DNA from: Haliotis rubra
Taxonomy: Eukaryota
Direction: 5' to 3'
Length of the DNA stretch: 64,000 bases
Assembly: GCF_003918875.1 (NCBI RefSeq)
Contig: NW_025767679.1
Coordinates: 620,001 to 684,000 of the forward strand
Shown here: positions 3,377 to 41,505 of the stretch, piece after piece
Numbering within the stretch: the first letter of the stretch is position 1
How the letters are laid out: each line of letters opens with the position of its first letter
Position numbers and translations under genes: made by a program
The notes under the pieces: generated by a model
The model's database searches: none
What the model was told of the DNA's origin: nothing
What the model saw: the letters and a program-made list of their open reading frames with translations, nothing else

Positions 3377-3562
3377 GTGAGTGAGCGAGTTTAGTTTTTT
3401 ACACCACACTCAGCAATATTCCAGCTATATGAAGGCAGTCTGAAAATAATCAAGTCTGGACCAGACAATCCAGTGATCAACAACATGAGCATCAATCTAC
3501 GCAACTGGGATAGGATGACATGTGTCAACCAAGTCATCAATCCTGACCACCCAGTCCCTTTA
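3377..3562 (-). mobile_element. SINE-like retroposon family B, 5'-truncated copy
   Basis: Reverse complement of the 3' ~185 nt of the copy at 3582-3828, including the GCTGGAATATTGCTGAGTG and (ACTC)n tail. Confidence 0.85.
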
Positions 3563-3581
3563 GGCATTCTTCTTTCTATCC

Positions 3582-3828
3582 AACCCATGAAGGTCCGGGT
3601 TAGAATGAATCTTCAGTAACCCATGCTTGTCGTAAGAGGTGACAAACGGGATAGGGTGGTCAGGCTCGCTAGCTTGTTTGACACATGTCATCGGTTCCCA
3701 ATTGCGCAGATCGATGCTCATGCTGTTGATCACTGGATTGTCTGGTCCAGACTCGATTATTTACAGACCACCGCCATATAGCTGGAATATTGCTGAGTGC
3801 AGCGTAAAACTAAACTCACTCACTCACA
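3582..3828 (+). mobile_element. SINE-like retroposon family B (no tRNA head), TSD-bounded copy
   Basis: 11-bp TSD TCTTTCTATCC at 3571-3581 and 3829-3839, (ACTC)n tail, and several homologous copies in the window. Confidence 0.9.
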
Positions 3829-4012
3829 TCTTTCTATCCGCCTTGTATGTAATATGGGAGGATATAATAATCAGTCTTTCTGCTCGACCATAATGAAAAT
3901 ATTTTATTGTCCAGATCATATCTCTAAAACTAATAGATATTCATTCTTTCATGAAAATTTGGAGGTAGTTTGTCATCTTCTGTGATACTTGTTTAATAGT
4001 AAATATATTATC

Positions 4013-4240
4013 TATCCGGATTAGAATTTGTCTCAGCAACCCATACTTGTTGTAAGAGGCGAATCACAGGATCGGGTGGTCAGGTTCGCTGAGACATTTC
4101 ATCATATCCCAGTTGCATAGATCAGTGCTCATGCTGTTGATCACTGGATTGTCTGGTCCAGAATTGATTATTTACAGAATGCCATTATATTGCAGGAAAG
4201 TTGTGGAATTTTTAACAACAAATAAACAATAAAACAAACG
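4013..4240 (+). mobile_element. SINE-like family B, diverged copy
   Basis: Aligns to 3590-3800 (GTAAGAGGCGA...GGATCGGGTGGTCAGG...GATCACTGGATTGTCTGGTCCAGA) and has a CAAA-rich tail. Confidence 0.8.
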
Positions 4241-7159
4241 GTATTATCTCAAACATCAAAGTCTTTGTGGATATCTCTGTATCGGTATGACATGTAATGT
4301 ACACAAAAAGACAATGCACTTACATATAATTTTTATGTTGTGTTCATGTATATCCGCTGAGAAATGTTACAAGAACATTTTCTTTAATCACACCTGTAGG
4401 AAAAGCAATGACTATGATTTCAGAATTAGCTCCCAAGCTTGATAGGATATGTCCACACACAAGGATTCTCAAGGAGATGAGCTGACTGTAATAGCTCGTA
4501 CCATATAAGTATGTCCTGTGTGAGTGACATAGACTGACCACTGGATAACCCTTCACCTGTCAAGGAGGCACCTCACCTGAGTTGTCCACCTGAACACCAC
4601 CAGCTAGCCAGTCGCAACACACCTTGCCAGCACAGTGTTGCATAGTTAGGGGCTAAACTAGGCCTGTCTCTGTCTCCCATCAGCATTTCATTGTCAGGTC
4701 AGGTCACATCGGCAGTTCTTGTGTTACCGGCCATATTGTTTACTTGTCTGAAATTGGGAATTTGTCATAGAATTAGTCTTTTGAAAATGAAATGGAATTG
4801 ATATTTGTGAGGCAGTAATGCATAGTTTCAGAATTTTAGAGTTTGTATAATATCTAGCTTTCTCTATATACATTTTTACTAAAACAGATGTACTGGTAGG
4901 TAATTTTGGAAAGATTTCTTAATTTTAGCAGTTTTGGTTACATATGTTTACAAAGGGTACATTAATATCATTGTCAGATTTCTTTTCAAGTAACATGTTT
5001 TATGTAAAAATATAACAATTATATTTTTGTTTTGTTTGTGTCACATGAAGAGGGTTAATTTTCTTCAGATTGTATACATCACACCTGAAGAGAGTAACTT
5101 GATCAGAAAATTTACTTAAACATTTGATCCTGTTAAAAACAAAGAAATAATTATGATTGAAAAGATTCTGACAACATCTAATTTTGGGACTGCTATTGGG
5201 ACTGACATAGTTTAGTGAAAGAAAGTTTCCTGTCAGTGTAGCTAAAACGAACTAACGGTAATCATGCATAAATACCACAGACTCCCAAAATTACTCAGAG
5301 ACATCCAAGCCATTAGCAACAATGTCCTTTATTGACAGTTAGCAACAGATCAGGAAACATGGTCACTCATGTAGTTCAAAATAGTTTTTGGTTGGTGTGT
5401 TTCACTTCAGTACATCAAACACCATGAATATTAAAGAGTGCCTTGTTTTTATTTTTTTATTTCTATCATGCCTTATAAGCTGAGATAAATGATAATGATT
5501 GAAAATTGTTTCTTCAGCATGTATTGAAAAGTTGTAGAGAAAATAGGTTTGGGATTATATTATTTAGATCGTGTGCTTAGTCTTCACTTTCTTGCAACAA
5601 AAATGTGCCCCAAAAATATTCATGATCCCTAAATATTTATGTTCAATATGAATTGGAAGTGATTTTTGGATATCATGACTTCCTACATTCGCTACATTAA
5701 GTATTTGACAGTACAAGGTTGTGTTGGATACGAATAGTACACCTGATTCAGGTTTTGTTAAGCAGAGCTGACTTCAGATCATGATTTTCTAAAGTCTTTT
5801 GGCACTTCTATTTTGTTCCTTCTTTCTTTGTTTTCCCTCTTTCCTTGTCTTCCTTTTTTTGTGTAAACATGCAAGTTCCTTTGTCCACAAACCCTGGATG
5901 CTACTTCTCAGTTTCCATTTCACTGTCATACTTAATTTGTAAATTAAAAAACATGAATGTTTCTGCCTGTACTTATTCAAGTCAATGAAGATGGGAATCT
6001 TTTTGTAATTTTACCATCAGCTGAAGAAAACACCCATTGATTGTAATGAAACTCAGTAAGACATTATATCTAAATCAAGGTCTCCTTACTTCAAGACAGT
6101 TTTCTCTGGAAAAGGAAACAAATGAGAAACATCCAATTCAAAATTGTGCCTTAACCACCAAGTAATGCTCATTAAATCATAAAGCTTAAAACATCCCCTA
6201 ATTCCAGTCCTGGACTCTTTCAAGTGCCGGCATTAACCATTGAAAGAAGTTCATCCCCCTTTCCCTGGTCATTGGCATGTCAAAATGAATTGACCAGTAG
6301 TATCCCACGTGGTGTTGTGTTTCGGAGAGGCATGCTCAAGGCCTTGAGGGACCTCAATAGGGGTCAGTCTGACTCAATAGGGCCAGAGTGACCCCACTCC
6401 TTCCATCTGCGGACAGCGGAAATAGTGGCTGGAGTTTTCTGGAAGGACAATGAGTTTTTTGGCCATGTCATTGTTGTTGAAATTATAGAATAGTGCATGT
6501 CCAGCTGCTAAGATGATGGTGAAAGTTTCTGATTGGTCAATGTCGGACTTGGTCAGAAATCGAAGGAAATTGTGTCCTGATGTCTGGTTTCATGGTTGCC
6601 ATATTTGGTTATGATTCCTGACAGTGTTAAATTGGGTCAGTTAAAGATTAGTTCAATGAGTTGGTGTCATGGGAAGAAAGTGTGTGAAATATATTTTTAG
6701 GAAGCAAGTTTTGAAAACTGTCAGATATTTCTCTCTTGTTTTAGTTGGAAGATGTAATCTGGCAACTTTAAAAGATTTTTGTTGTATGTTTAGTATTTGT
6801 TCAAATATGTCTTTTGTGTTCATTCCATCATTGTGTTAAGAGTTATAAGTTTTTAACTTTGTTTGAACAGTTGTTGTATATGTTTATATTAGGAAAAATT
6901 AGAACCAATTTTGTGTAAAATGCCTTATTTTATAATCAGGGAAGACAAGTAAACCCTCAATTAGGTTACATAATTTTGCATCAACTATCATTATCCTCAT
7001 AGTGGGACTAGTAACCATTTCTTCAGACAGCTTACCAGGTTTTAATCTGTTTCTGAATAAACAATACCAGATAAGAAAAACAAGGCATCAATAGCTATCA
7101 CTGGTACAATGTTGGGTCATTTTATTGCCTTGTTGGTATCTAATGCTTCATTCTAATAG

Positions 7160-7285
7160 GCGCTAGCCGCTACACCCCATTCAATGATTCACAGTTGGGG
7201 TTTACCATTCAAATGGAGAGCCAGCGAACCAGTCTTGCCTCAAGCCATCTGGGCAGATCGGAGGTCAGTGACGTAGCGTGGGTTA
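7160..7285 (+). ncRNA. Candidate structured intronic RNA element immediately upstream of a 3' splice site
   Basis: Closing helix CGCTAC 7168-7173/GTAGCG 7273-7278 encloses three hairpins. Six CpGs are retained in a CpG-poor background. Confidence 0.55.
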
Positions 7286-7310
7286 TGTAACTTTTTTCCT
7301 TGCTTCACAG

Positions 7311-7388
7311 GCCCAGGCCATCAGCCATTGCTGATCAGGGACGCTTGGCTTGAAGCTTGTTCATGGGAAAGGACTTAAAAGATTTCTG
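7311..7388 (+). other. Candidate 78-nt cassette exon (poison or start-codon-containing)
   Basis: TAAC branch-like motif at 7288-7291, pyrimidine tract CTTTTTTCCTTGCTTCACAG|G and donor CTG|GTGAGT. All three frames contain a stop, but an internal ATG (MGKDLKDF) is open to the donor. Confidence 0.5.
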
Positions 7389-10300
7389 GTGAGTTGTCTT
7401 TTGATGGTTTTTCATTCTTATTTTTGTATAAAGTTGTGAAATGTTTGTTTGAAAGTCGTAGATAAGAGTTTGTTGAACAGGAATTTGTGTTTGATACTTG
7501 ATTTGAAGTTTCAGTTTGGCTGGTTTTGCAGAGAAGGTAAGGGGGTTCGACAGGAGTTGCCCTCCCATCCACAACTGTGTATGTGTTTGATTGGAGTGTT
7601 GATGTATAAAGAATGCAAAGAAATGCAGTTTGATGCACAATGTATTTAGACAGAAGTCGTTGTTATTTACATGACAAATTCTTTCCTTACTGCAGCCATC
7701 TTAGAATATTTATCATCTTGGACAAGGAGTGAAACAAACACTCTTGTCTGAATGACCTGACATTGCAGATAATAAGAAATACTCATTTCATTTTGTCAAG
7801 GTTAGTTAAACATATATTTGCTCTGCATGATATGTTATAACCTATATTGCCAATATCATTATTGCGATGTTAATTATTGAAATATTGATTATCTTATTAA
7901 GAATGACTGTATGATGTTTGTGGGATATTAATTATTGAAATCTTGATCATTTGAAAATTGAGAATTAATTTACGTTAGTTCCATATTAGTTGTTGAAATC
8001 TTAATCACTTAAAATTAGGAATGATTTTATGAGCCTTAAAAGTATAATAATATAAAATATAATTCTTCCAGATCTGAGGTTTTGTACTGTATTCAATTCA
8101 AAATAACTTTACAATTCAGCAAGGATGAATTATTGGATTAATGATAAACAGAGTTAGTTTCAGATTGATTATGGAAAGTGCAGATTATGGAAAGTGCAGC
8201 ATATTTGATATCAGCAGGAAAATATATTAAAACCCAAAACATTAAAATCTGAAAATAATGAATGTTATTTTTGTAGCAGTGAGAATATTGCTTAGGGATT
8301 ACCTTTAGATATGCTTGTAACTGTTTTGTTTTCTAAAAAAGCATTTTTGTGATTTGTTTATCCCACAATGTATTCTCACATGGGTTATGCTTTCGGTTAA
8401 GCTTAGCTATTGGCTCAATGTTCAATACAACTCACGGCCTTGATTAAACAGCAGGTGTAATGGAAGTGCGTGGGTTTTATTCAGTCTCCAGTAGTTCTCT
8501 GCAAGTGTCCATCTTGACCGCTTGTTAACACCATTACCTTTCAGAATTGAAAGATGCAGCTATGTGTTTCTAATGCACACAATAGATGTAAACAAATGTA
8601 CCTGACTGAACAAAGTAAAATGAATGTGGCTCACTGTCAGGGATGTGTGTAAACAGACAACATTGTCATACATTTCAATTAGCAAGTTTGTCAGATATTG
8701 ATGTCATTGATTTAGTGTTGAACTTGAGGATTAGTTTTGGGTGTTGTACGTATTGTGTGAACAAATAGTTCTTGCCTTCAAAGGTTCTGTAATAAATTAT
8801 TTCGAAATCTTTTCTACTTTCATGTTCAAAAGATTTAGTTGTACTGACAGTAAATATTTGGAATTCTTCTTAAGCAACAATAGGTTTCAAAATTTTTTTA
8901 CCTTTTTAATAATGATATTAGTGAAAATATTGTGCATTTTATTCAGTGAATGATCTTTGAATTTGTTGTCTTGATATCTGAATTTTCTTTTCCTTGGAAT
9001 TTGAGCATGGTCTTACCCCAAAAGCGACACACATAAACATTTCCAGGTGCTAGACAGTTGGGGATGTTATTGACGTCTTCTCAAGATTGACAGCAATCAA
9101 ACATGATGAATCCTGTCAACTGCCAAGGCCGCAGAGACATCCTGTGAAGCTCACCAGCTGACCACAATTGGACATTATTACAAAACACAAGGAGCTGCAT
9201 GGACACTGGGAGAACAATATGGCCATCTTATGATGGGCTGTCCTCAGGATAGTGTTGGTGACAAGAGTGTACTTGTATGGATCTTCCCTTGAGCGGATCA
9301 CTGGCTGAGGATTGTCTTTGATATTGACTGACTTGGAGTATATGCAGTTGTTGCTGTGGAGGTTTTCATGGTGTGAAAGAGTTGCCATCAAGTTGATTAT
9401 AGATGCTAGGAGAGGGTTTTGAAGTGTGGAATGGGGATAGAGAGTCTTGATTAATCGTGGCTCCTGGTTGTATATTTCACATTATTTTAACGATTTCCTA
9501 TTATATTTGTTGTTTGTCAAAGGTTCATGTTAAAGTGCAGGGAGTTATTATATGAAGACTTTCTACTTTGATATCGAGAAAGATCATTACCTTTTGTATT
9601 TGAAGATTGAACACTTAAAACTGTACATTAGAATTGAAATGTGTCAACTGTATGATGTATCATAAGAGCAATGGATTAACACTCAATATTAATTTTGAAT
9701 TTAAATAGACTATGAAACAGGTGTAAAGACAGCAAGGTCTTTTTGTAAAAGTTTTTGAATAGTTTTTGACTTCTGTATCATTTCAAAATCTTCTTGCAAC
9801 ATAAAATACTATTGTTTTTTAAGCATTTGACAATTTGAGCATGTTGAATATATCTCTTTTCCTGAATGAAAAACTCAACCCTACCAGTCCTAAAAGACGA
9901 ATTTGGAATAACTCAAACGTATCTGGTATTTGGTAGAGACTGCTCCCTGTTTCAGCATTTGCTTTGATCTTGGTAGTACATAAGGACACGGATTTCAGTG
10001 AAAGTCAAAGATTTAGTCAGTCATGACATTCAGGTGAAAGTTGTGTTTTGAACCTCAAGGCATAGATTTGGAGGGAGACATGACACATGGTGAAGGCCTC
10101 AGGATGTGCAAGGCTTCTTGTGTCATTGCTGTTATTGGCAGAACCATCTCTGGTTTCTGTGGCCACTCATCATGATTTATGTTTTGGGGCTTCTGCCTGA
10201 ACTGCCTTGAGTTCAGAAACTTCCTGAAGACAGTGCATTGGGTTTGGGGAAGCAGATTGGATAATGATTATCTGTAAATAGCACCATAACCATGAAGCAC

Positions 10301-10727
10301 ACTTTCTGCCTGTGATGTAACTGACAATACCTGGGGATCATTATAGACTGGATGGGCGGGACACCCTCACCTTTAATCAACACCAGGTGTCATGACGATG
10401 AGTGATTCATGTACACATGCTCACGATAAAGTCTGTATGGATCAAGTGACTAATTTAACAGAGATTTCTTATGAATATTGAGAGGATTTTATGCTTTTGT
10501 TGTTGACCACAAATGTGATGAAGTTTGAATACCTGATGTAAACATATGATTTGGAGGTCTGTTCATGATATTATGGAAAAATATGCATGGCATCGTGTGG
10601 ATGTTGCTGAAGTGCAAAGAGAAAGTTAAATCAGTCGGTGCTAGAGTTTGTGAAAAGCATGCTTCAGTGAATAATTAACATGATACAACCTGATCTCACT
10701 TCCTGTCATTTTCTTTTCTCAAATACC

Positions 10728-11727
10728 AAACTGGACATGTTGGAAGTCTAACATATGACTGTCTTATATCAAGAGCTATGCCAAGCATGTTTGAAGTCCT
10801 ACACTTGATTGTCTTACACAAGGACCAACCGTGAACATGTTGGAAATCTAACAGTTGATTGTCTTACACAATTGCTAGGCTGAACATGTTTGAAATTTGA
10901 CAGCTGATTGTCTTATACAAGGAGCTAAACTGAACATGTTGGAAGTCTAGCAGTTGATTGTCTTATACAAGGAGCTAAACTGAACATGTTGGAAGTCTAG
11001 CAGTTGATTGTCTTATACAAGGAGCTAAACTGAACATGTTGGAAATCTAACAGTTGATTGTCTTATACAAGGAGCTAAACTGAACATGTTGGAAGTCTTA
11101 ACAGTTGATTGTCTTATACAAGGAGCTAAACTGAACATGTTGGAAGTCTAACAGTTGATTGTCTATACATGGAGCTACACTGAACATGTTGGAAATCTAA
11201 CAGTTGATTGTCTTATACAAGGAGCTAAACTGAACATGTTGGAAATCTAACAGTTGATTGTCTTATACAAGGAGCTAAACTGAACATGTTTGGACAGTGA
11301 TTGTCTTACAACAGCTAAACTGAACATGTTGGAATACAAGGATTGTCTAAATGGAGCTACACTGAAAATGTTGGAACATGTATACAAGGAGCTAAACTGA
11401 ACATGTTGGAAGTCTAACAGTTGATTGTCTATACATGGAGCTACACTGAACATGTTGGAAATCTAACAGTTGATTGTCTTATACAAGGAGCTACATTGAA
11501 CCTCAAGGCATAGATTTGGAGGGAGACATGACACATGGTGAAGGCCTCAGGATGTGCAAGGCTTCTTGTGTCATTGCTGTTATTGGCAGAACCATCTCTG
11601 GTTTCTGTGGCCACTCATCATGATGTATGTTGTGGGGCTTCTGTTTGAAATCTAACAGTTGATTGTCTTATACAAGGAGCTACACTGAACATGTTTGAAA
11701 TCTGACAGTTGATTGTCTTCCACAAGG
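10728..11727. repeat. 50-bp minisatellite, interrupted at 11496-11643
   Basis: Unit GGAGCTAAACTGAACATGTTGGAAGTCTAACAGTTGATTGTCTTATACAA in tandem, degenerate at the edges. Confidence 0.95.
11496..11643 (+). repeat. Direct duplicate of 10048-10195 inserted in the minisatellite
   Basis: About 148 nt near-identical (2 mismatches seen), from TTGAACCTCAAGG to GGGGCTTCTG. Confidence 0.95.
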
Positions 11728-14433
11728 TAACTACGCCAGACAAGTGGGAAGGATTATACCAGGACCTACAATGGACGTACTTGATGCCTAGCATTTGTCT
11801 GTTAGCTATACAGGACAGGCTGAATGCCTAACAATTTGCCATCTTATGGCCGGAACTACATTGGAAATGTTTGAGTTTCTTTGACTGCAGTAGCCCTTAT
11901 ATATAAAATATCCAAACCCATTATGGATGTCTGAAGTCAGCAGCAAAGACATTCTGTTATATGTATCCTCTCGGAGAGTGTAATGATCATGGAATACCGC
12001 AGTCATCTGATACACTTATTAAAGCTTTGAACTACATCAGTTTACTTATCAACATTGGTCCATCAGAATGGCTTTCATGCTCCAGGCTAATGGTTATGGT
12101 AACCATAGTAACAGACTGCAACTGTAGTATTTAAAGTCAGTTTGTTTGATGGTGAATATCGGAGACCCTTGAAGTTTGACTTGAGGAGGAAACTCTTACC
12201 TTTGTGACTTACATGCAGTCAGTATTTTGAGCTACTTTGCATGTATGTTGTGTCAGTATGTTTGTCAGTTTGTTGGGTGTATGCTGGAAACAACAATGCA
12301 TCCATTTAATGGAAAGGGGCTTGAAAATTTGAAATCACATGTTGTATGAGAAATGGCCCCAGGGTTGTCTGCCTGACAAAGGAATGCACTGAACCCAACT
12401 TGCATTTGTGTGAAGGAAAAATCTTCAACTGGACAAAATTACATTGATAACAAGTAGCAAATGTATTTTTATTTTGATTGAACTTTAATTTATAATGATC
12501 AATAGTAAATGTTTATGACACACATGACATAGTGTATGATGATGTCATGGCTCAATAAATAAGTGAAAATACATTGTATTAAAGAAACTATAAATATGTT
12601 GTACACAACCTGAACAAGTACACCCAAGAACTTTTGTTCTAGGATAAGCATGATAAGAACTGAAGAAAGTTAGTATTCATAATTAGCCTCCAGCAAAGTA
12701 GGAATATACATTGCCAGGGTGTCAGTGTCTGAAGTGATTGAGGAGCTGGACATGGGGGGGGGGATAGAGAGGGGGACAGACTGGCAGACATTACTGTCAT
12801 ACTGTGGTAGGTCAAGGGACAGGGCAAATTCTGGAATACCTGGCTCTGTTGACAGACATGTCTGGACAGGGTTGTGTGCTCACTGGACACTGGTCACTGC
12901 TTGCATAGGAAGTCCCCAGTGGAGGGGGATAAGACAAGGGGTTATATTGATGGTGGTTGTTTGCTGATTGATGGTCTCAAAGTGAGATAATCTGATTATG
13001 TGATGTGAGGCATCTAACTTCTCATTGATGTCAAGTAATTACAGGCGACTATTCTTGTATTGTTAAATATTGTAAAGTTGATATTTGGACCTTACATAAC
13101 ACTGTTTCATTGATTAGACAAAACTGAGACAAACTGATGAAATAGAGTTTAAGAACAATCTATCTGTAAATTCTGAAAAAAAAGGATTTTCGATTTTAAA
13201 TGGTAAAAAAAGAAATGTTAATTTTGAACATTTAAAATTTCAAGTCTTTCATAAACAATTGCACTACCCAGTAATTATAACCAATATACACATAGATTGT
13301 ATTCATTAAAGATCTCTGCACTGTTTCAACATCACTTCTTGCTAAGAGTAATCTTGATGAGAATGCTAATTGCTTGTAATCCACTTTGCATAATGATGAG
13401 ATATTGGGTCCTCCCTGCATGTGAAATACCCACACAATGTCCTGACTGTCTGGACAGTTTGGTCAGCGAAATGACCACATCAGTGGCTTTGCTTTCATGG
13501 CTTCCCTGCCTGAAATGGGTCAAACGCTGATTTACTGATTGCTATCAATTTAGGATGCCTCAGTCCCCATAAAACTCATTTGGGGAGGTTTGATTCGTTT
13601 CTTAGTCATGTAGCCCTTGCATTTCCTTAATGTGTTGGTTTTAGAGCATTTTACACATAGGGAAACTAATTCATTTGAATCTTTCTGAATGTATTGCCTC
13701 TGTTTAATAACAGACTGAATATAAATGAAAGAAATATGGGAAACTGTATTTGTGGAGCTTACTTTTACCATCTGTTACAAGTTCTGAAAAGTGCTAGAGG
13801 GAAGTGGTTCATCCATTATTGATGAATGTCATTTATAACACTATTGGTACAAAGGTTTCAATTATTTTAAAAAAAAAGACTTGAAAAATTCATCTTTTCT
13901 GTCTTAATTTTCAATAATGTTCTCAAGGATTTTTGTGTTTATCAATTAAGTTCTTTCATGTCGATAATAAAAGAACAGTGAAGGGAAAATCAACACACTT
14001 ACTTATAATTTTTAGTGAATAAGTTGTGTTAATGACCCATAATTTGGGGTTCGTGTTCTTTTTGGGAGTGATCAAAGAAAATTTAAATATATGTAACTAA
14101 GGGAGCCGGGAAGAGAACAAATGATATGTCATGTTGAAGAGACATATCATCATAAATGCATATTTAGGCAAGGAAAAAATAAGTTCAAATTTCTTTTGAA
14201 ATTTCTGACCAATAAGTGTCTAGTAATATATCTCAGAAAATATTTCATAATATTTAGTTTCTGCAGCTGTTTATTATTTATAGGATAATTATGTTAATAA
14301 TATAAATTCCATATTTCACAGAATTATATGTTTTTCTGTTATTAGAATCTGTCACATTGTCACAATGTTTTAACATGAATTGCTGAGGAATTCTGTTCAT
14401 AATGTTGACACCATATTTGGTGTATTTAGTGCC

Positions 14434-14598
14434 AGGGGCGGTGGGGTAGCCTAATGGTTAAAGCGTTGGCTCGTCATGCCGAAGACCCGGGTTCGAATCC
14501 CCACATGGGCACAATATGTGAAGCCCATTTCTGGTGTCCGCCCGTGATGTTGCTGGAATATTGCTAAAAGCGGCACAAAACCAAACTCAGTCAGTCAG
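14434..14598 (+). mobile_element. Short tRNA-derived SINE (family A), full length
   Basis: A box TAGCCTAATGG, B box GGTTCGAATCC, (TCAG)n tail, and TSD GTATTTAGTGCC at 14422-14433 and 14598-14609. Confidence 0.92.
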
Positions 14599-14949
14599 TA
14601 TTTAGTGCCCCAGGTGTTTCGCTAATTAAAATCTAATAGGGGCACTTATTAGTATTCCCTTTGAAGGGGGGTACTAATTAGGAACAGGTTTAAAACCACA
14701 CAAAACAGTTAATTAACTTTTTTTGCCATGCCTTTGTATGAGAGGGTTCACGCTTTCCTCAGTGACCTATACTGACTGCATATACTGCTCACTTTTTCTT
14801 CTGTGCAGAAAGATGAAATATACATGCAGTAATGAATTCTAATATTGTTTTCACTTTTGTACCATTAATCATGCAATTGAACTTATATATTGGGACTCAT
14901 TTGTTATATCATTTTTATTGATTTTCGGGGAATTAATGTTTTTACATTT

Positions 14950-22092: not shown

Positions 22093-23994
22093 GTGCGACC
22101 GTTCATGCATGGGTGAGTTTCCATGTGTGTCTGTTGTCTTCTATATTTTGATTTATTGTAGTAGCAAGATTTATCAGACTAAAAGCAAACTTACTCCACA
22201 TCACGGATCACTTACAGCAATGTGAGTAGACAGGTGACATTCTTCTCCTAAAGACTTGACTACATTTTAACCTTGTTGGATCTTGTATAACTGCATGATG
22301 TCATCAGTGAAATGTCGGTCCATGTTAGCACTTGAGGGAAAGGCTTTTGTACTATCCATTCTCTAAAACAAGTATGAGACTGAAATGTGAAAATTTAGTA
22401 TTTTCTTCTAGATGATGTCTCATCCATAATGGTTAAAATCATTTGGAAAGTTAAACTCTGTTAGTTATAATTCATGCAAAACTGTTGATACAGTGATATT
22501 CCTAAAACCCATAGCAGTATATTGTGACTAAGGCAGAGTAGTGAATGCATACAATCCACCAATCATCAAGATTTGTTGCTGTTGTGGTGTTGTTTTGTTT
22601 TAAGTACTTTAAGCATTTAGTGACTAGTGAACATTGGTGGAGATGTTTTCAGTACCTGATGAAGAATTAGGTAGCATACCATTGATACAGAAGATTGGCA
22701 ATGAAAGATTTAACAATTTCATTTTCCAAGCATATGAACAGGTATGGTTTAGTTTCCTTGTTTGGTACGCCTTTGTAAAGGACTCATCATAGCAGTTGAT
22801 AGCCGTCATGGCCCCAAAATCAAACAGACAGAAGAAAGAACAAAACAAAGAAAGAATAAGGCCTATGTTGTTTCAGATGTCTTTTTAATCCCAATATGAC
22901 GTTGATGTGTTTATGCTGGTACCTTTATTAATATCACTAATTATTTGTTTAAGAAAATGTTTTTGAATGTCTATACAGGCAGTTGATCGATAACCTCACA
23001 CAGATATAAAAAAAAACAAGGTTATTTCCTGTTTCTGACATGCCCTAGGGTCAGAGAGTGTACTGCGTAGATTGAGGCGTGTGATATGTGCTGACGGACA
23101 AACCAGACATGGTCATAGGTCCCTTGACATGTGTGATGTAGATGCGTAGATGGAGTCCTTTTAAAACCAGTTTACTTTTTCACTGTCTTGTATTATCAGG
23201 TATAATATTTACTTCTGTGCTTTCAATGTTTTGATATATACGTTATAATATGAAATATTAGTTGAGAAATAAGTAACTGTGATCACTTGGTGATTTTAAT
23301 TAAAATTATTTTAACAGTAAACTGTGTGACCTTGACCTTTCTGTTGAAGATATATTTATAAAGAAACATACGAGAGATGATGGATACATAGTACTGAAAA
23401 GATGGTTGTGCTAAATGATGAAAGGAATTATCAGCTCAATACTAAGCCCGAACTTATTTGATGACCTTGACCTATCAGTTGCCAGAATTTATTTACTTGC
23501 CTGTTCTGCGAAATTAGTTTCTCACAATAGATCGGTCTCTGGGTAAAAGGAGATACAAATTAATAAAATCTTCAGACATTGATAAATTGCATTGATTTAC
23601 ACTAATACATAAATGGAATCCTTAGGAAAGTCTGACCAGTGCAGGGCTATTTGTCTTGTGACCACTTAAGTTTGTGGGAAATGTTTCCCCAGTGGACAGT
23701 CCAGCATAAGAGGGTGACATTTACACTGCCTTGTGTTTACAGAACTTATAACGTCAGTGTTCCAATAACAGAGGATAGATACCTCCACTGGGCATCTTGT
23801 GAATGAATACTCAGAAATTAGTAAGTATGTGATGTTGATGGTTGGGCTTGAAAGTCAAGAAGGAATACTCTTAGCATTTGGTAAGCAAAAGATTACCATG
23901 CTCTCTTTTTTTGAAAACGTTTTCAAACCAATGTGTAATAATTGTTTGGAATTAGAATACACCAGAATTTTATTTACTGGACTTTTTGCAATGC

Positions 23995-24048
23995 GTGAAT
24001 GAGTGAGTTTAGTTTTACACTGCACTCAGCAATATTCCAGCTATATGG
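23995..24048 (-). mobile_element. SINE family B 3' tail fragment
   Basis: GAGTGAGTTTAGTTTTACACTGCACTCAGCAATATTCCAGCTATATGG is the reverse complement of the family B 3' end. Confidence 0.8.
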
Positions 24049-29435: not shown

Positions 29436-31966
29436 ATTTTGTAAATTGAAAATTTCACTTTGATTTCATCTTTGAATTTATTTGTTAACAATTTACAATT
29501 AACAACAGAAAGATTATTTTCATGTTCAGTTTGCGCCATCAGAAAGTTTTTGACGCAATGAAGCTTGACACAGTCAAATGGTCTTCATATGACATATGTT
29601 GCTCTTGTTTGTTTCTGATTATATATGAAACTCCTATGGATTATCTATCGGGTCAGTTACAGACAGGCACCGATGATCCTATCACAGTGCTCAGCACTGA
29701 ACCATCACCACCATTATGCTACAGGCATTTAGATTTCAGTGAACACAATGGTTCATATTGCACATAAATCATGCTTGAATTAATCTGAAAGCATATCTCA
29801 TGAGATCGATTTCAACATGGAACATGCCTGAATAACTTCTCCGTTTAACAATGAGACATGAATATTTCACTCACCACATTATCAGCTTGCATGACAAACA
29901 GGTCAACTAAATACCTCCAATCTGTGTAGATTAAGGGGTCACTGTAGCAGATACACTAACATATATGTGAGCCTGATGTTTGATGTTCTAGGGGAGGTTC
30001 TGGGATGTTTTTACAACATAACCTTTCTTAAAATTAATTTTTTTACGTAAAACTATAAACACAAGCTTGATATACTGAAAAAGAATATCTTGTGGATAAA
30101 AAGACCTCAAGCCTGTTTGAATTATTTTTTTTTTTTTTTTTTTTAGAAACAAAAACCCTGTCCACACCCTCATTTTGTTAAATGGTTGGCCCCTTCCTAG
30201 CCTTATTTACATTGGGATGAGACTCTGTACTGACATTGATCATATACACATGTGCCAACATTGCTGTGCATTGATTGTATATCATATTGGCCACTTAGAC
30301 CAGTATCACATAGGTGTGAAGGTGTAGGATATTGTCAATGGCATGTGCAGATATGTGATAATGATTCTTCTCATGCATGTAGGTACATGTCCCCAAATAG
30401 ACTTGTTGATGTAATTGGCTAGTTTGCTCTTGTCCATGTTGATCTTTGATATGGACATTGACAATCTGTCACTATGTTGGGACAGATTAACACTTCAGGA
30501 TACGGGACTCTATGTCTTAAAGTAAGGGCACATTCTCAATATGATTGTTGTTGTTGATTACAATTCAGTGGGATTTCTTGGTAAGGACCTGAATGCATAT
30601 TTCATGCAGTGTTAGTAAATTTGATGTCATTTTGTGCCTTAGCCTGATTTGACAAGTAGTAAAAAAAAGTACATTTAGATCTTTGATAATTTTTGAAAGA
30701 AATTATGAAGAACAGCAGAAGACAATATCGTAGAGACTTATAAGTGATGTAAAACATTTTGATTAATTATGTGAAGACAATATCTGAACTCAGATAATGT
30801 TTCACGTTTTATGAGGGGTTAGTATTAATTGTTCTAATGAAGGAATTCTTAAGGGGCTCATATGAATAAGTTCAATGTGCCATGTTGAGAGATTGCTTTC
30901 AAAAGAAAATCTCCTCAAATCCCAACCAACATATACAATTAAGTATTTTGTTGCTGTGGTATTAAATCTTCAGCTAGAGTTATGCTTGAGGCAAAAAAAA
31001 AAAATAGAGAAATATTATGTGCATGTCAGCCATATGCCACAAATTGACATGTAATACGAAACACAAAATGTTTTCTTCTTAATATATATCTTTTAGATAA
31101 ATGAGTTTTCTGGACGTACAAATCTATTAAGGGAACTGCTGGAATCATTTATTCATGGCCAAGGAATACGCTGCCATTTGGAGTTATTCTTATGTGTTGT
31201 CTAGAATACCTGAAACCTGTAATTGTATTCCTCTAGCAGAAAAAGAACGTCAAAAGGAAAGCATTGAACTATTGATCTTTTGATTAACAAGCTAAAGAAC
31301 GTCTCACGAAGCAACTTACTGTTGACTGATGATGATACTGGAAGCATTACAGTGTCTTGTAGCATCTTGATTTGGGTAATAAATTACTCAATTTAGTTAA
31401 CTGGCTCTGCAGAATCATTCAGAAGCCAACAGAAGCTGGAACAACTGGCCTTTGATGTTCCTTGGAATGTTTCCTTGAGGTAGGAAGATTTGTACCGGTA
31501 TTCAAATCTGTATTGTATGTGATAAAGTCTGACTACCTTGTACTGTTGAAAAATCCATCACATTGAAAGAGTGAGAATAAGAAAAGGGATTCTTACAGAT
31601 TGGGAATTACTGTGTAAAATGCATCTTTAGGGACTTGGTTGCAATTTACATCTATGTGATCAAATACACATACAAGCATTATGAGTCTCTGAATATTTTT
31701 TAAATCTACACCTGAAATCTTTAAGACTTCAGGTTGAGATGGAATGGAAGATAAAAAAACCAAAACATACCAAATAGTAGTAGGGGGAATGATAAGAAAA
31801 AGACGTATAGGTGCACCTTTGCTTAGAAGCTTCCATACGGGCTAATTCTGCTACCAGCCTAGTAAAAAATGAGTGTTTGCCCAAACCCTTCGACAAGACC
31901 ACTTTCGGCTGCTCCCAATGCAGTGCACTCCCAGTTAGAGCTATGTGGGTGCATGGATATAGAAAC

Positions 31967-33140
31967 ATGCCAGGAACCAAGCTCTCGCGCGAAGCCTATA
32001 CCGAGATCCGATCGGGTCGTTTGTCCCTTCGGGAAGCGAAGAGGAAGTACCACATATCGCAAGCTCGATACACGCGAATCCGAGGTGGTATAGACCCCGA
32101 GCCCCAGACGACGACAACTCCCGACATGGCCGAAGACTTGAGGCCCTGCTGCAGAAGTGTCGCCCGTGTTGCTTTCCCGACCGAGAGAAACAAATCCTGG
32201 GGCAATCGGGGCACACCTTCTCTGGCTACCAGATCCCCAAACAGTTTCTCGAACTCTACTTGCTGTGCTTTCACCCACTAGTAGAAGCCGGCAAAATAGT
32301 CGATTTCGTCTACATCTACCCACCCAACCAATTTCGACCCTCGGCGGCAAACTCGAATCATTCTCGCCGGCGACTGCTATCCGGGCCCCAAGGACAGACA
32401 CAACCGATGCACTGACTGCCTCGCCACTCTATCGGAACTGCCTGCTCTCATCGGACCCCGACAACTCGATGCAGTAAGTCGCGGCGCCATCGACCACTGC
32501 GTCGACAGCAAGAAATGTGTTCTCTGGGAAAAGAAAGCGATAGACTACACACCCCAGGAGCGACTCCAACTCGAGGTTCCAGAAGAGATCGTGCTCGACA
32601 GCTGTTTTCGCGAATATAGAGAACCTGTACGACAACGCGTGCGCTTTCTGGAGCATACGGTATGCACTCCTCGCCAGCAAATTTGTGGACCATTGTCCAT
32701 GCAAGGAGAAAGAGTCTTGTATCTTCCGGCAGCTATCGGGGAAAGCAGAGGTACCACAGGGACGGGGCAATATTTGGCATACCCCATTGCCTAACTATGG
32801 CGGACCCAAGGATATGGAAGTAGCACCCCCTCCGTGCAGCGAACACAGAAAAGCCGCAGACGTCCCAGAAGGAGTCTACTTGTGCAAAAAGTTTGCTGTA
32901 GCGAGATACGAAGGGAAGAACCGGCTGTTGTTGCTACTCGATCCCCCGACTGGGGAAACAATTCCAGTCTACGGCTACAAGATACGAGAAACGATTCGGG
33001 CCGCCGGTGGAATAGAACGCCTACGGTTGGTGCGGGAACCGTTTCTGTGCATGCTAGGCAAAATCTGCCGCTCTCCCATATCGAAAGAGAAAGACGATAG
33101 AGAAGTCGACTTGCTGCTTCCAGACCTTGGGCGAGAATAG
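31967..33140 (+). pseudogene. Frameshifted gene: N-terminal psq-like HTH, Cys-containing middle, uncharacterised C-terminal domain
   Basis: MPGTKLSREAYTEIRSGRLSLREAKRKYHISQARYTRIRGG resembles a pipsqueak-type HTH. Protein-like open frames continue by about 3 frame changes into track ORF 32685-33140. Confidence 0.5.
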
Positions 33141-33143
33141 CTT

Positions 33144-33406
33144 CTATGGGCCCTTCCAGACACCGCAGGGCCAGGGAGAGTAGACCTCCAGCAGCTCGCC
33201 TAGTATTTTTGCAGATGCAGTCGCGGGCTGGGGGTTGCAAAGGACGAATGGAAATTAAATACACTTGTCTAGGCCCGTTTTAAGTATTCCAACTGCTTTT
33301 CATGGAATTTGTGGTACGGAAAGTAGGGCACACGCCCCGACGGGGAAAAACAAACGCATGGTTCGTATACCCTACAACAATACTTTTTTCCCCAAAAACG
33401 CTGCAT
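33144..33406 (-). pseudogene. Small disrupted ORF (MQRFWGKKYCCRVYEPCVCFSP...ELLEVYSPWPCGVWKGP)
   Basis: ATG lies 8 nt after the stop of the 33415-33873 ORF and the proposed stop abuts the + gene stop. Joining the two halves needs a frameshift and passes one stop. Confidence 0.3.
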
Positions 33407-33414
33407 TCCACACT

Positions 33415-33873
33415 CTACTCCATATGGAAGGGATCCCCACATTTGGTCTTGGGTGTTTCTACCTTCTCTGTCGGTGTGTGGAGGGGGTGCACGAAGGGGG
33501 AAACTGGTTTGCTGTGCTTCCAGGTCTTGTAGACGACCTTCCAGAGAAACAGGGCGGCTAGCGAAAGGTAGGTCCACCTTTGGGCTGTTTCTAGCAACTG
33601 CCGCACCTTCTGGATATCCAGACGGGTCTCTTCTTGTTCCTCCTCGACGTTTTCTATTTCCTCCCGGAGTTCTTCCTTGTCGTCCTTGTCCAGCATCGAC
33701 AAGATGTCGACCAACAAATTCGTGGTTTGCTCCACACGAGCCGGCAACGAATTCGTGGTTTGCTCCACACGAGCCGACATCACCGCAGTTTGCTCCACAC
33801 GAGCCTCGAGCCTCCCCAAGCGAGCCTCTCCAAGCGATATTAATTGATCAGATGAAGTGTGTGAAGACTTCAC
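33415..33873 (-). CDS. Hypothetical coiled-coil protein with a hydrophobic (possible TM) segment
   Basis: 152-codon ORF with E/K/R heptads (DKEELREEIENVEEEQEETRLDIQKVRQLL), hydrophobic WTYLSLAALFLWKVVY and three in-frame ARVEQT repeats. The true ATG may be at 33920 across a frameshift. Confidence 0.55.
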   Translation of the reverse strand: MKSSHTSSDQLISLGEARLGRLEARVEQTAVMSARVEQTTNSLPARVEQTTNLLVDILSMLDKDDKEELREEIENVEEEQEETRLDIQKVRQLLETAQRWTYLSLAALFLWKVVYKTWKHSKPVSPFVHPLHTPTEKVETPKTKCGDPFHME

Positions 33874-33956
33874 TCCTCTTGCAAAGCGAACAAAACCATC
33901 TCAGAAGTACAAACCGTCATGCTACTTAAAAAATACATCCCGCTCTAGCAAAAGCG

Positions 33957-35345
33957 TATGGAATAGTCAGTGTTGTAATGTATACAAGCACACATACAAG
34001 ACAATGTGTGGAATATCCAGTGTTGTAATATATACAAGCACACACATAGGGCAATGTGTGGAATAGTCAGTGTTGTAATATATACAAGCACACATACAAG
34101 ACAATGTGTGGAGTATAGTCAGTGTTGTAATGTATACAAACACACACATAGGACAATGTATGGAATAGTCAGTGTTGTAATATATACAAGCACACATACA
34201 AGACAATGTGTGGAGTATAGTCAGTGTTGTAATATATACAAGCACACATACAAGACAATGTGTGGAGTATAGTCAGTGTTGTAATATATACAAACACACA
34301 CATAGGACAATGTGTGGAATAGTCAGTGTTGTAATACATACAAGCACACACATAGGACAATGTGTGGAATAGTCAGTGTTGTAATATATATCCAAGCACA
34401 CATACAAGACAATGTGTGGAATATAGTCAGTGTTGTAATATATACAAGCACATATACTCATAGAAAACAATAAGGGAAAACATGAAAGTACAAGTGTTCC
34501 TTTATTTATTTCCAGAATTTCACTCACAGTGCAATACATACCTTGTGAAGAAACCTGGAAAAGAATAAAGGAAGACTTGTACTTTCATGTGTTCCCTTAT
34601 TCGTTTCCATGAGTATATACAGGACAATGTGTGGAATATGTCAGTGTTGTAATATATACAAGCACACATACAGGACAATGTGTGGAATATGTCAGTGTTG
34701 TAATATATACAAGCACACATACAGGACAATGTGTGGAATATGTCAGTGTTGTAATATATACAAGCACACATACAGGACAATGTGTGGAATATAGTCAAGT
34801 GTTGTAATATATACAAGCACACATACAGGACAATGTGTGGAATATGTCAGTGTTGTAATATATACAAGCACACATACAGGACAATGTGTGGAGTATAGTC
34901 AGTGTTGTAATATATACAAGCACACATACAGGACAATGTGTGGAGTATAGTCAGTGTTGTAATATATACAAGCACACATACAGGACAATGTGTGGAGTAT
35001 AGTCAGTGTTGTAATATATACAAGCACACATACAGGACAATGTGTGGAATATGTCAGTGTTGTAATATATACAAGCACACATACAGGACAATGTGTGGAA
35101 TATGTCAGTGTTGTAATATATACAAGCACACATACAGGACAATGTGTGGAATATGTCAGTGTTGTAATATATACAAGCACACATACAGGACAATGTGTGG
35201 AATATGTCAGTGTTGTAATATATACAAGCACACATACAGGACAATGTGTGGAATATGTCAGTGTTGTAATATATACAAGCACACATACAGGACAATGTGT
35301 GGAATATGTCAGTGTTGTAATATATACAAGCACACAAATGTGGAA
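33957..35345. repeat. 51-52-bp minisatellite with a MITE insertion
   Basis: Unit ATGTGTGGAATATGTCAGTGTTGTAATATATACAAGCACACATACAGGACA in tandem. Confidence 0.95.
34453..34617. mobile_element. TA-flanked MITE (Tc1/mariner-like) inside the minisatellite
   Basis: Arms TATACTCATAGAAAACAATAAGGGAAAACATGAAAGTACAAG/CTTGTACTTTCATGTGTTCCCTTATTCGTTTCCATGAGTATA. A relative lies at 49605-49761. Confidence 0.85.
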
Positions 35346-35987
35346 TAATCGGTGTTGTGATATATATGAATGTGGTTGTGTTTTGAGACATGTTACTTTT
35401 TTCGGCCACAACAAACAGTCTAATCATGGCTGTCACTTGTGTGCCCTCATGGTCCATTAGACGAGTAAACACATGCAGAGTAAACACATGCTAAGTAAAC
35501 ACAGCCAACTGCCATATCAACATTACAAATAAACACTAGTACCTCTCCCGACAGCTGGGCCACTCAAAAATAATGAGCCTGAAATAATGTGACATCTTAC
35601 CTAGTGTAAAAATAATCACGTCAGATCTAAATTCTAAATCTTTGTGCTTTCATTGATGCTAAAAATAAGAAGTCAAAACCAGGAGCTTCCATCTTATGAA
35701 TGTCCAGACATTTTCATCTATCGGAGATCAGAGGATCAGGAAAGTTGTCAGAGATACAGAAATAATATGGAATTTGACTTTTGACTTTCTCGCCCCTTTG
35801 TAATATACATGTGTTTCTCCTGAAGGGAGGCACTTAGCAGTGATGGAACTGACTACAAGTACCATGGGGAGGCCTGCTGTTGAGATAGGTACTTGTGGGT
35901 CACCCATGGTGCTGTGTTTTGGAGATTTATCTCCTGACCAGAAACATGTTTCACATTGACCCTGTGAAGTGAATATAAATTCGGAAA

Positions 35988-41020: not shown

Positions 41021-41436
41021 AGTGTATGGCCACCATTAGCTCAGTTAGGCTTCAAATCCATGTCTCACACTTTTTACAAAAGAAGGTTCACAAATAAATA
41101 GATGTGATACTTTGATGTTAAAGGGTATGAGTAACCTAGTGTAGTACATCCAGTCTGACAGTCAAATAATCAGTGCCCCCATACTTGGAACACCTCCCAT
41201 GACCTAGTGCTCTATGTAAGATGCACATAGTAAGCAAGTCCAACTCAAGACTTCTGACCTTTGCTGGGTTGTGAGTGTTGAGATTCCGACCCCTCCCTTC
41301 ACCACCATCATATGTACACCTTTGTAGTGTTCTCTCTACTTCCAGAATAAGAAAGATAAAACTCCTATCAGTATGGCAATTTCCTATGCTGCACATATCA
41401 ATGAAAGATGTCACATATCATATAGGTGAAGACTGA

Positions 41437-41505
41437 CGGACTGAATTTGGTTTTACGCCGCTTTTAGCAATATTCCAGCAACACAACGGCGGGGGACACC
41501 AGAAA
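41437..41505 (-). mobile_element. SINE family A 3' fragment
   Basis: GGTTTTACGCCGCTTTTAGCAATATTCCAGCAA...GGGGACACCAGAAAT is the reverse complement of the family A 3' half. Confidence 0.85.

What the first reader, a model, noticed from the sequence alone, without database searches (positions are those of the whole stretch)
7160..7388. Multibranch RNA fold docked directly on the branch point of a stop-containing cassette exon
Seen: CGCTAC 7168-7173/GTAGCG 7273-7278 closes three hairpins: ACCCCA 7174-7179/TGGGGT 7196-7201, CCAT-TCAA-ATGG 7205-7216, and CCAGTCTTGCCT 7229-7240/GGGCAGATCGG 7251-7261. Purine-rich linkers (AGAGCCAGCGAA, AGGTCAGTGAC) join them. Six CpGs survive in CpG-depleted DNA, suggesting purifying selection. 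Ten nt downstream come TAAC, a pyrimidine tract, CAG|, 78 nt with stops in all frames and a GTGAGT donor, with YGCY motifs clustered around it. Inference: a structure-controlled poison or alternative exon. Unverified recollection, offered only as a hypothesis: the core CCATTCAAATGGAGAGCCAGCGAACCAG...GATCGGAGGTCAGTGACGTAGCG may be deeply conserved in protostome muscleblind (MBNL) introns; MBNL is known to bind YGCY.
Basis: partly seen in the sequence, partly recalled or inferred. Interest (0 to 1): 0.85.

Follow-up and report, generated by a model that had tools for sequence, protein, structure and literature searches.

The report
Conserved exon-like non-coding block, no fold
The stems are there but fold no better than shuffled sequence and one is lost in a relative; the real feature is a 550-base non-coding block under strong selection that holds a very exon-like 78-base unit, with nothing linking it to muscleblind.

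Summary
The multibranch fold is not supported. It is no more stable than shuffled sequence (z +0.39, -0.97 and -0.52 in three frames of reference). It is not the minimum-energy structure, and no Rfam family matches it.

I recovered one diverged relative, a Logan contig with spacer identity of 53-67%. Against it there are no compensatory changes. Five of 52 paired positions changed and four of those break pairs. Hairpin 2 is lost.

What holds up is strong sequence-level constraint. Positions 6950-7500 are 91.5% identical to the relative, and 7279-7310 is 100% identical. This block is one of four conserved non-coding blocks between 4.3 and 8.8 kb.

Inside it, the acceptor at 7310|7311 is the best of about 7,400 AG sites on both strands of the window. 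The donor at 7388|7389 ranks 4th of 4,289 GT sites on the + strand. That pairing is unique in the window.

YGCY motifs are not enriched. No CCCH zinc-finger exon lies in the 64 kb. The exon's frame-3 stop is absent in the relative.

No RNA data could be obtained, so splicing is inferred, not shown. My best reading is a conserved non-coding exon (5'UTR or alternative) with linear regulatory flanks. The rivals are an enhancer or promoter element.

The parts
6950..7500 (+). Conserved non-coding block B, which contains the whole finding
   Evidence: 91.5% identical to relative contig L002 (47 differences in 551 nt). Neighbouring spacers are 53-67% identical. Within organism A, only one variant (7203) was listed between 7007 and 7506, against several in each flank; the table was truncated.
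7160..7290 (+).
   Evidence: The stems exist. z is +0.39 on the + strand and -0.77 on the - strand. Identity to the relative is 93%, no higher than the unstructured flanks. Nothing in Rfam overlaps it even at E<=10.
7205..7216 (+). Hairpin 2 (CCAT-TCAA-ATGG)
   Evidence: Its 3' arm is lost in the relative through a 2-nt deletion plus substitutions at 7212-7215 and 7218.
7262..7292 (+). Run of protein-site-like motifs: AGGTCA (also a GAG|GTCAGT donor-like site), TGACGTAG (half CRE) and GTTATGTAAC (fits RTTAYGTAAY and contains the putative branch point TAAC)
   Evidence: 100% identical in the relative. The motif names are my own reading of the sequence and were not tested. TGACG is rare in GC-matched windows (2%).
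7291..7310 (+). Pyrimidine tract and CAG acceptor
   Evidence: By a rough PWM of my own, this is the best of 3,713 AG sites on the + strand, and none of about 3,700 on the - strand equals it. 7279-7310 is 100% identical in the relative.
7311..7388 (+). 78-nt exon-like unit
   Evidence: It has a stop in each frame in this genome. In the relative the frame-3 TAA reads TGG. Identity is 95%, with 4 changes.
7363..7388 (+). ATG-initiated frame that stays open to the donor (MGKDLKDF plus TG|)
   Evidence: It is the only ATG in the unit, and the frame is open in both species. The two changes are TTA>TTG (synonymous) and AAA>GAA. The -3 position is T, a weak start context. This is a sub-hypothesis only.
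7389..7394 (+). GTGAGT donor
   Evidence: PWM score 11.0, 4th of 4,289 GT sites on the + strand. Unchanged in the relative.
7537..7542 (+). Second strong donor (GAAG|GTAAGG), a possible alternative 5' splice site
   Evidence: PWM score 11.3, 2nd of 4,289. Still donor-like in the relative (AAAG|GTAAAG). Using it would end the ATG frame at once (TGG TGA).
6050..6700 (.). Conserved non-coding block A, 0.6-1.2 kb upstream (context)
   Evidence: 93% identical overall and 96% over 6150-6500. No ORF longer than 55 aa. By eye it contains CGGAAAT, CTGATTGGTCA (CCAAT-type) and CCATATTTGG (CC[A/T]6GG).
8400..8750 (.). Conserved non-coding block C (context)
   Evidence: 90% identical. By eye it is rich in CAGGTG, ACAAT and TAAT-type motifs.

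Best explanation
Positions 7311-7388 are most likely a real, short, non-coding exon of a long + strand transcription unit. It would be either a 5'-UTR exon, possibly carrying the start codon at 7363, or an alternatively included stop-containing cassette.

The exon sits inside a ~550-nt block (6950-7500) that is conserved at the level of primary sequence. The GC-rich 120 nt upstream (7160-7280) belongs to that block. I think it works as a linear platform for sequence-specific proteins, either splicing regulators on the pre-mRNA or transcription factors on the DNA, and not as a multibranch RNA fold.

Shown: the coordinates, the strength and uniqueness of the splice-site pair, constraint against one relative, and the lack of support for the fold.

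Inferred: that the unit is actually spliced, the strand and extent of the host transcript, and which proteins bind.
For: Splice signals:
- The acceptor at 7310|7311 is the top-scoring AG site on either strand of the 64 kb.
- The donor at 7388|7389 is 4th, and a second donor at 7536|7537 is 2nd, of 4,289 GT sites.
- No other acceptor-donor pair within 30-300 nt comes within 2-3 bits on either strand.

Conservation:
- L002 is collinear with window 4338-8829.
- Block B is 91.5% identical, 7279-7310 is 100% and the exon is 95%, against 53-67% in the spacers.
- Conserved flanks of 100 nt or more are typical of regulated exons. That is established knowledge, not tested here.

Strand:
- AATAAA is under-represented on the + strand both upstream (4 against 9) and downstream (38 against 66) of the exon.
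- T exceeds A and G exceeds C throughout.
- The whole window is CpG-depleted (o/e 0.1-0.5), as expected for a methylated gene body.

Against a fold and for a linear reading:
- z-scores run from +0.39 to -0.97.
- There are no compensatory changes, and 4 of the 5 changes at paired positions break pairs.
- Paired positions changed at 5/52 and unpaired at 3/59.
Against: - No RNA evidence at all. Every run that holds the locus is genomic DNA, with contigs running straight through the flanks.
- No upstream or downstream partner exon and no coding exon was recognised anywhere in the window, so the host gene is unknown.
- Blocks 0, A and C are equally conserved, lack an acceptor-donor pair of comparable strength and look like transcriptional enhancers. 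Block B could be one more of them.
- Block 0 shows that E-box clusters (CAGGTG) can mimic strong donors, as at the - strand site near 4577.
- The PWM is a rough one of my own, not trained on this taxon.
- Only one relative was found. It cannot be excluded that L002 is an old paralogue and not an orthologue.
Confidence: 0.5

Rival explanations
1. Block B is a transcriptional cis-regulatory element (an enhancer or silencer) like its neighbours. It is never spliced, and the acceptor-like and donor-like sequences are fortuitous.
For: - It is one of four conserved non-coding blocks within 4.5 kb. These are ~4400-4700, 6050-6700, 6950-7500 and 8400-8750.
- Conservation is uniform over 550 nt and does not peak on the exon.
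- Conserved motifs resembling AGGTCA, TGACG and RTTAYGTAAY are present.
- No coding exon lies in the 64 kb.
- E-box clusters in block 0 already mimic a top-scoring donor.
Against: The single best acceptor of about 7,400 AG sites lies 78 nt ahead of a top-4 donor. By my estimate, about 0.02 such pairs are expected by chance in the window. No transcription-factor motif is known to me that mimics a 17-nt pyrimidine tract followed by CAG.
Confidence: 0.25
2. 7160-7290 is a promoter, possibly an alternative or internal one. Transcription would start in the pyrimidine run near 7291 (C followed by ten pyrimidines, TCT/TOP-like). In that case 7291-7388 is a first exon, or a 'hybrid' exon used both as a first and as an internal exon, ending at the GTGAGT donor.
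For: - bZIP-like sites (TGACGTAG, GTTATGTAAC) lie 0-25 nt upstream of the pyrimidine run, and all are 100% conserved.
- Local CpG o/e is 0.67 against 0.31 for the window.
- Two of the four strongest + strand donors lie within 250 nt downstream.
- There is no ATG between 7291 and 7363.
- GC skew rises from about 6 kb onward.
Against: - There is no CpG island.
- AT skew and the AATAAA strand asymmetry are already present upstream of the site, which suggests transcription comes in from further upstream.
- The acceptor is too good to be needed by a pure first exon.
- There is no TSS evidence of any kind.
Confidence: 0.17
3. One reading: a multibranch RNA structure at 7168-7278, docked on the branch point, controls inclusion of a poison exon. 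The host gene would be muscleblind, and the element would be deeply conserved in protostomes.
For: - The helices can be drawn, and each has an ensemble probability of 0.3-0.75 in the isolated 131-mer.
- The region is under selection.
- The exon has stops in frames 1 and 2 in both species.
- A large gene with long introns and many conserved non-coding blocks is compatible with a gene like mbl. That is my own knowledge, not tested here.
Against: - The fold is no more stable than shuffles and is not the MFE.
- There is no Rfam hit.
- There are 0 compensatory and 4 pair-breaking changes, and hairpin 2 is deleted in the relative.
- YGCY is not enriched.
- No CCCH or MBNL-like peptide occurs in any frame of the window.
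- A 22-mer from the recalled core found only a chance 23-nt match in an unrelated metagenome contig.
- A literature search gave nothing on such an element.
Confidence: 0.05

Closest known systems
Conserved alternative or 'poison' cassette exons with conserved intronic flanks, such as the ultraconserved NMD exons of SR and hnRNP genes
   Same: A short exon with stop codons and strong splice sites. The exon and 100 nt or more of both flanks are conserved without codon periodicity.
   Different: Inclusion, skipping and NMD sensitivity have not been shown. The host gene and reading frame are unknown. One of the three stops is not conserved. Conservation is documented against a single relative only.
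5'-UTR exon carrying the start codon, ahead of a very long intron
   Same: The ATG at 7363 is the only ATG in the unit. It is open to the donor in both species, and no coding exon lies for 56 kb downstream.
   Different: The start context is weak (T at -3). Only 8 codons are available, so there is no statistical support. No downstream coding exon was identified.
Clusters of conserved non-coding elements (developmental enhancers) around regulator genes
   Same: Four blocks of 90-96% identity lie within 4.5 kb of gene-poor sequence, rich in E-box, Sox-like, homeobox-like and CCAAT-like motifs.
   Different: Only this block has a complete, top-scoring acceptor-donor pair.
Hybrid first/internal exons and exon-proximal promoters
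   Same: Transcription-factor-like sites abut a strong 3' splice site and a pyrimidine initiator-like run.
   Different: There is no TSS evidence and no CpG island.
MBNL/mbl autoregulated exons
   Same: Only the general idea of a regulated exon with conserved flanks.
   Different: No YGCY enrichment, no CCCH exon in the window, and no homology shown.

Membership tests
Conserved structured cis-regulatory RNA | Match to a curated covariance model | tested here: not met
   Rfam 15 gave 0 hits at gathering score in the window. Nothing overlaps 7160-7390 at E<=10. ARAGORN found 0 genes.
Conserved structured cis-regulatory RNA | Folding energy beyond dinucleotide shuffles | tested here: not met
   z is +0.39 (7160-7290), -0.97 (7168-7278) and -0.52 (7140-7400).
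Conserved structured cis-regulatory RNA | Compensatory base-pair changes among relatives | tested here: not met
   Two sequences only: 0 pairs changed on both sides, 1 changed to G-U, 4 paired positions broken, and hairpin 2 lost. Power is low because 47 of the 52 paired positions are unchanged.
Cassette / poison exon | Functional-looking 3' and 5' splice sites at a suitable distance | tested here: met
   The acceptor ranks 1st of 3,713 and the donor 4th of 4,289. The pair is unique on both strands. This uses a rough PWM of my own.
Cassette / poison exon | Premature stop in the host reading frame | tested here: inconclusive
   There are stops in all three frames here. The stops in frames 1 and 2 are conserved, while the frame-3 TAA reads TGG in the relative. 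The host frame is unknown.
Cassette / poison exon | Junction reads showing inclusion and skipping; rise on NMD inhibition | not testable with these tools
   No RNA run holds the locus. All four runs laid are genomic contigs.
Cassette / poison exon | Conservation of the exon and its intronic flanks | tested here: met
   The exon is 95% identical, the upstream 32 nt 100% and the downstream 112 nt 89%, against 53-67% in the spacers, all against one relative.
muscleblind (MBNL) locus / MBNL-regulated exon | Host gene encodes tandem CCCH zinc fingers | tested here: not met
   No C-x7-9-C-x4-6-C-x3-H match on the + strand, and one chance-like match on the - strand. No LEVCREF-type peptide. Exons beyond the 64 kb cannot be excluded.
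muscleblind (MBNL) locus / MBNL-regulated exon | Clustered YGCY motifs near the regulated exon | tested here: not met
   Six YGCY motifs, a count reached by 11-21% of GC-matched windows or shuffles.
Promoter plus first exon | Local relief of CpG depletion or a CpG island at the TSS | tested here: inconclusive
   o/e is 0.67 over 121 nt (6 CpG) against 0.31 for the window, and 0.42 over 7100-7400.
Promoter plus first exon | Mapped transcription start | not testable with these tools
   No RNA, CAGE or 5'-end data.
Intronic snoRNA (C/D or H/ACA) | C (RUGAUGA) and D (CUGA) boxes next to a terminal stem, or H and ACA boxes | tested here: not met
   By inspection, AUGAUUC lacks the second GA, and there is no CUGA next to the 3' arm on either strand. 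There is no Rfam snoRNA hit in 7160-7390.
Recursive splice site | AG immediately followed by GTRAGT | tested here: not met
   The sequence reads CAG|GCCCAG.

The most novel reading that the evidence does not exclude
The 78-nt unit is a lineage-conserved, regulated stop-containing exon of a large RNA-binding or developmental regulator gene. The invariant 150 nt upstream, including the branch point, would act at the RNA level as an autoregulatory sensor, through bound protein or through a fold too conserved to show covariation at this distance. That would be an invertebrate counterpart of the vertebrate ultraconserved poison exons.
Probability: 0.08. Interest if true: 0.6.

Novelty: new member of a known kind. 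Interest (0 to 1): 0.25.

Why it matters
If the unit is spliced, it marks an unannotated non-coding exon and its control region in a very long mollusc-like gene. It would be a tractable case of an invertebrate alternative exon with near-invariant flanks.

As it stands it is an ordinary conserved non-coding block. Its main value is negative: the attractive multibranch fold and the muscleblind recollection do not survive testing.

A practical side result is that spurious ORFs called on Logan contigs can be used to fetch orthologous non-coding DNA of animals when no animal genome collection is available.

Tried and rejected
- Rfam at gathering score and at E<=10, and ARAGORN, found nothing relevant.
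- C/D snoRNA, H/ACA snoRNA, Sm-site snRNA and recursive splice site were rejected by inspection.
- The element is not a repeat or SINE. It is single copy in the window, and single contigs span it.
- EF-1beta, suggested by the MG.DLK start and the TOP-like run, was rejected. No EF-1beta peptide motifs occur in any frame.
- CCCH and MBNL peptide scans were negative.
- An ab initio search for coding exons (stop-to-stop ORFs of 55 aa or more, and PWM-flanked open exons) gave only repeats and nothing convincing.
- Sequencing runs: all holders are genomic DNA. Organism B is about 96% identical, too close to be informative.
- The metagenome scan with a 22-mer of the recalled core gave one chance 23-nt match in an unrelated contig, L001.
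- A protein search with the block A ORF (6176-6388) found no candidates.
- phmmer of P0001 against 1.84 billion representatives found only itself.
- Splicing-factor motifs (YGCY, YCAY, GCAUG, UCUU, UGU) are not enriched.
- Earlier-findings look-ups gave nothing on this locus.
- Paper searches gave nothing on a protostome mbl intron element or on the run DRR299178.
- One protein search was left unused, because a further spurious-ORF query seemed unlikely to succeed.

Full report
**1. The observation**

- The closing helix is CGCTAC 7168-7173 with GTAGCG 7273-7278.
- Hairpin 1 is 7174-7179 with 7196-7201.
- Hairpin 2 is CCAT-TCAA-ATGG at 7205-7216.
- Hairpin 3 is the imperfect helix 7229-7240 with 7251-7261.
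- There are six CpGs between 7161 and 7278.
- TAAC lies at 7288-7291, followed by a pyrimidine run and a CAG ending at 7310.
- The 78-nt segment 7311-7388 has a stop in each frame.
- GTGAGT lies at 7389-7394.

The window is AT-rich (37% GC) and strongly CpG-depleted (o/e 0.31). Its SINE-like repeats and minisatellites look like those of a mollusc-type animal genome. That taxon is my impression and was not tested.

**2. Is the fold more than chance? No.**

- The 131-mer 7160-7290 folds at -34.7 kcal/mol, against -36.3 +/- 4.0 for dinucleotide shuffles (z +0.39). The minus strand gives z -0.77.
- Cut exactly at the closing helix (7168-7278), z is -0.97, and 37 of 200 shuffles fold as well.
- In a 261-nt context, z is -0.52 and the closing helix is no longer predicted.
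It is not the minimum-energy structure. Its closing-helix pairs have ensemble probabilities of 0.09-0.31, and most pairs of the three hairpins lie between 0.56 and 0.76.
- Rfam has nothing at gathering score anywhere in the window, and nothing overlaps the element even at E<=10. There is no tRNA or tmRNA.
- By inspection there are no usable C/D or H/ACA boxes, and the acceptor is not a recursive site (AG|GCCCAG).

**3. The other quantitative claims**

- YGCY occurs six times in 241-291 nt. That count is reached by 11-16% of GC-matched windows and 21% of shuffles. YCAY, GCAUG, UCUU and UGU are not enriched either.
- CpG o/e is 0.67 in 7160-7280, against 0.31 for the window. This is a weak excess and not a CpG island.

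**4. What does stand out: the splice signals**

I used a rough metazoan PWM of my own.
- The acceptor for an exon starting at 7311 is the best of 3,713 AG sites on the + strand. None of about 3,700 on the - strand equals it.
- The donor after 7388 ranks 4th, and a second donor after 7536 ranks 2nd, of 4,289 GT sites.
- No other acceptor-donor pair 30-300 nt apart comes within 2-3 bits on either strand.
- Given one such acceptor and four such donors in 64 kb, I estimate about 0.02 pairs of this kind by chance.

**5. Coding potential**

As an internal exon, the unit is closed in all three frames in this genome. The only ATG, at 7363, opens a frame that runs to the donor (MGKDLKDF plus TG|), preceded by an in-frame stop. 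The -3 position is T, a weak start context.

I found no convincing coding exon anywhere else in the window. I looked both among stop-to-stop ORFs of 55 aa or more and among open, PWM-flanked candidate exons. No CCCH zinc-finger or LEVCREF-type peptide occurs, and no EF-1beta motif.

**6. Transcription evidence**

None could be obtained. The runs that hold the locus are genomic. Their contigs run uninterrupted through 5.9-10 kb, including all flanks.

Organism B is about 96% identical, too close to be informative. One variant, 7203 T>C, is shared by all four runs, so the T in the window is private.

Within organism A, only that variant was listed between 7007 and 7506, while each flank has several. 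This fits constraint, but the numbers are small and the table was truncated.

**7. A diverged relative**

The spurious 101-aa ORF at 7338-7640 (minus strand) hit one protein, P0001, at 46% identity. P0001 is a TGA-readthrough ORF called on a Logan contig of run DRR299178. Its contig, L002 (4,783 nt), is collinear with window 4338-8829.

Identity to L002 in the pairwise alignment:

| Region | Identity |
|---|---|
| Block 0, ~4400-4700 | high by eye; the BLAST segment 4338-4788 that contains it is 81% |
| Block A, 6050-6700 | 93% (96% over 6150-6500) |
| Block B, 6950-7500 | 91.5% |
| Block C, 8400-8750 | 90% |
| Spacers | 53-67% |

Within block B:

| Part | Identity |
|---|---|
| 6950-7159 | 89.5% |
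| The 'fold', 7160-7290 | 93% |
| 3' splice-site region, 7279-7310 | 100% |
| Exon, 7311-7388 | 95% |
| 7389-7500 | 89% |

The selection, however, covers 550 nt uniformly and does not single out the proposed structure.

**8. Structure test on the alignment**

- Of 52 paired positions, 5 changed. Of 59 unpaired positions within 7168-7278, 3 changed.
- 7201 T>C turns an A-U pair into A.C.
- Hairpin 2 loses its 3' arm. CCATTCAAATGGAGAG becomes CCATTCAG--CGATAG.
- 7257 A>G gives a G-U pair.
- There is no compensatory change.
- The frame-3 stop of the exon (TAA) reads TGG in the relative. 'Stops in all frames' is therefore not a conserved property, although the TGA stops of frames 1 and 2 are retained.
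- The ATG frame stays open. Its two changes are TTA>TTG (synonymous) and AAA>GAA.

**9. Context**

- AATAAA is under-represented on the + strand, both upstream (4 against 9) and downstream (38 against 66) of the unit.
- T exceeds A and G exceeds C along most of the window.
- CpG depletion is uniform.

Together these suggest, weakly, that a + strand transcription unit spans the whole window. That would make the unit an internal exon and not a first exon.

The neighbouring blocks look like transcriptional elements by eye. Block A has CGGAAAT, a CCAAT-type CTGATTGGTCA and a CC[A/T]6GG box. Blocks 0 and C have CAGGTG clusters plus Sox-like and homeobox-like motifs. In block 0, the CAGGTG E-boxes produce a top-scoring donor on the - strand near 4577. 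This is a warning that conserved elements can mimic splice sites.

Directly upstream of the acceptor, AGGTCA, TGACGTAG and GTTATGTAAC are invariant. As DNA they read as nuclear-receptor and bZIP sites. As RNA, the last contains the branch point. The data cannot separate these two readings.

**10. The muscleblind sub-hypothesis**

- No CCCH exon lies in the window.
- YGCY is not enriched.
- A 22-mer of the recalled core found only a chance 23-nt match in an unrelated metagenome contig, with flanks that do not align.
- A literature search gave nothing on such an element.

No collection of animal genomes was available, so conservation across protostomes remains untested. A blank here means little.

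**11. Verdict**

| Reading | Confidence |
|---|---|
| Real short non-coding exon (5'-UTR or alternative, stop-containing) inside a sequence-conserved block, with flanks acting as linear protein-binding sites | 0.50 |
| Enhancer-type conserved element with fortuitous splice-like signals | 0.25 |
| Promoter with a first or hybrid exon starting near 7291 | 0.17 |

This is a new member of known kinds, of modest interest.

**Caveats**
- There is only one relative, and an old paralogue cannot be excluded.
- The PWM is home-made.
- There is no RNA data.

Noticed in passing
window 6050-6700: Non-coding block, 93% identical to relative L002 (96% over 6150-6500) against 53-67% in the spacers, and with no ORF over 55 aa. 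By eye it contains CGGAAAT, CTGATTGGTCA (CCAAT-type), CCATATTTGG (CArG-type) and twice TCAATAGGG. It could be the promoter or an enhancer of the same transcription unit.
   Followed up: partly
window 8400-8750 and about 4400-4700: Two more conserved non-coding blocks. The first is 90% identical to L002. The second looks similarly conserved by eye, and the BLAST segment 4338-4788 that contains it is 81%. Both are rich in CAGGTG E-boxes and in Sox-like and homeobox-like motifs. The E-box cluster near 4577 scores as a top donor on the - strand, an example of a transcription-factor site mimicking a splice site.
   Followed up: partly
window 31800-33950: A GC-rich island (52% GC, CpG o/e 0.93) in an otherwise CpG-depleted window (o/e 0.1-0.5). 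It has overlapping ORFs of 100-200 aa on both strands. It looks like a recent or unmethylated insertion, and another first-stage note already flags it.
   Followed up: no
window 44040-47630: A large minisatellite of 41-nt units, with more than 65 copies, many 94-100% identical. Each unit carries an acceptor-like and a donor-like site.
   Followed up: no
window 33910-35410 and 10715-11745: Minisatellites of 50-51-nt units that give long spurious Cys/Tyr-rich ORFs on both strands.
   Followed up: no
window 3380-4203, 14432-14600, 23992-24048, 41429-41506, 49393-49568, 50075-50243, 54306-54476, 55831-56074: A dispersed SINE-like repeat family in both orientations. It has a shared core, ...GCAATATTCCAGC..., and a (GAGT)n-like end.
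   Followed up: no
window 7203: The window has T here. All four laid runs (organisms A and B) and the relative L002 have C, so this is a private allele or an assembly error. It lies in a linker of the proposed fold.
   Followed up: yes
L002 1239-1754 (protein P0001): The public protein collection holds a 171-aa 'protein' that is a TGA-readthrough (code 4) ORF called across non-coding animal DNA. It is an artefact, but useful for fetching orthologous non-coding loci.
   Followed up: yes
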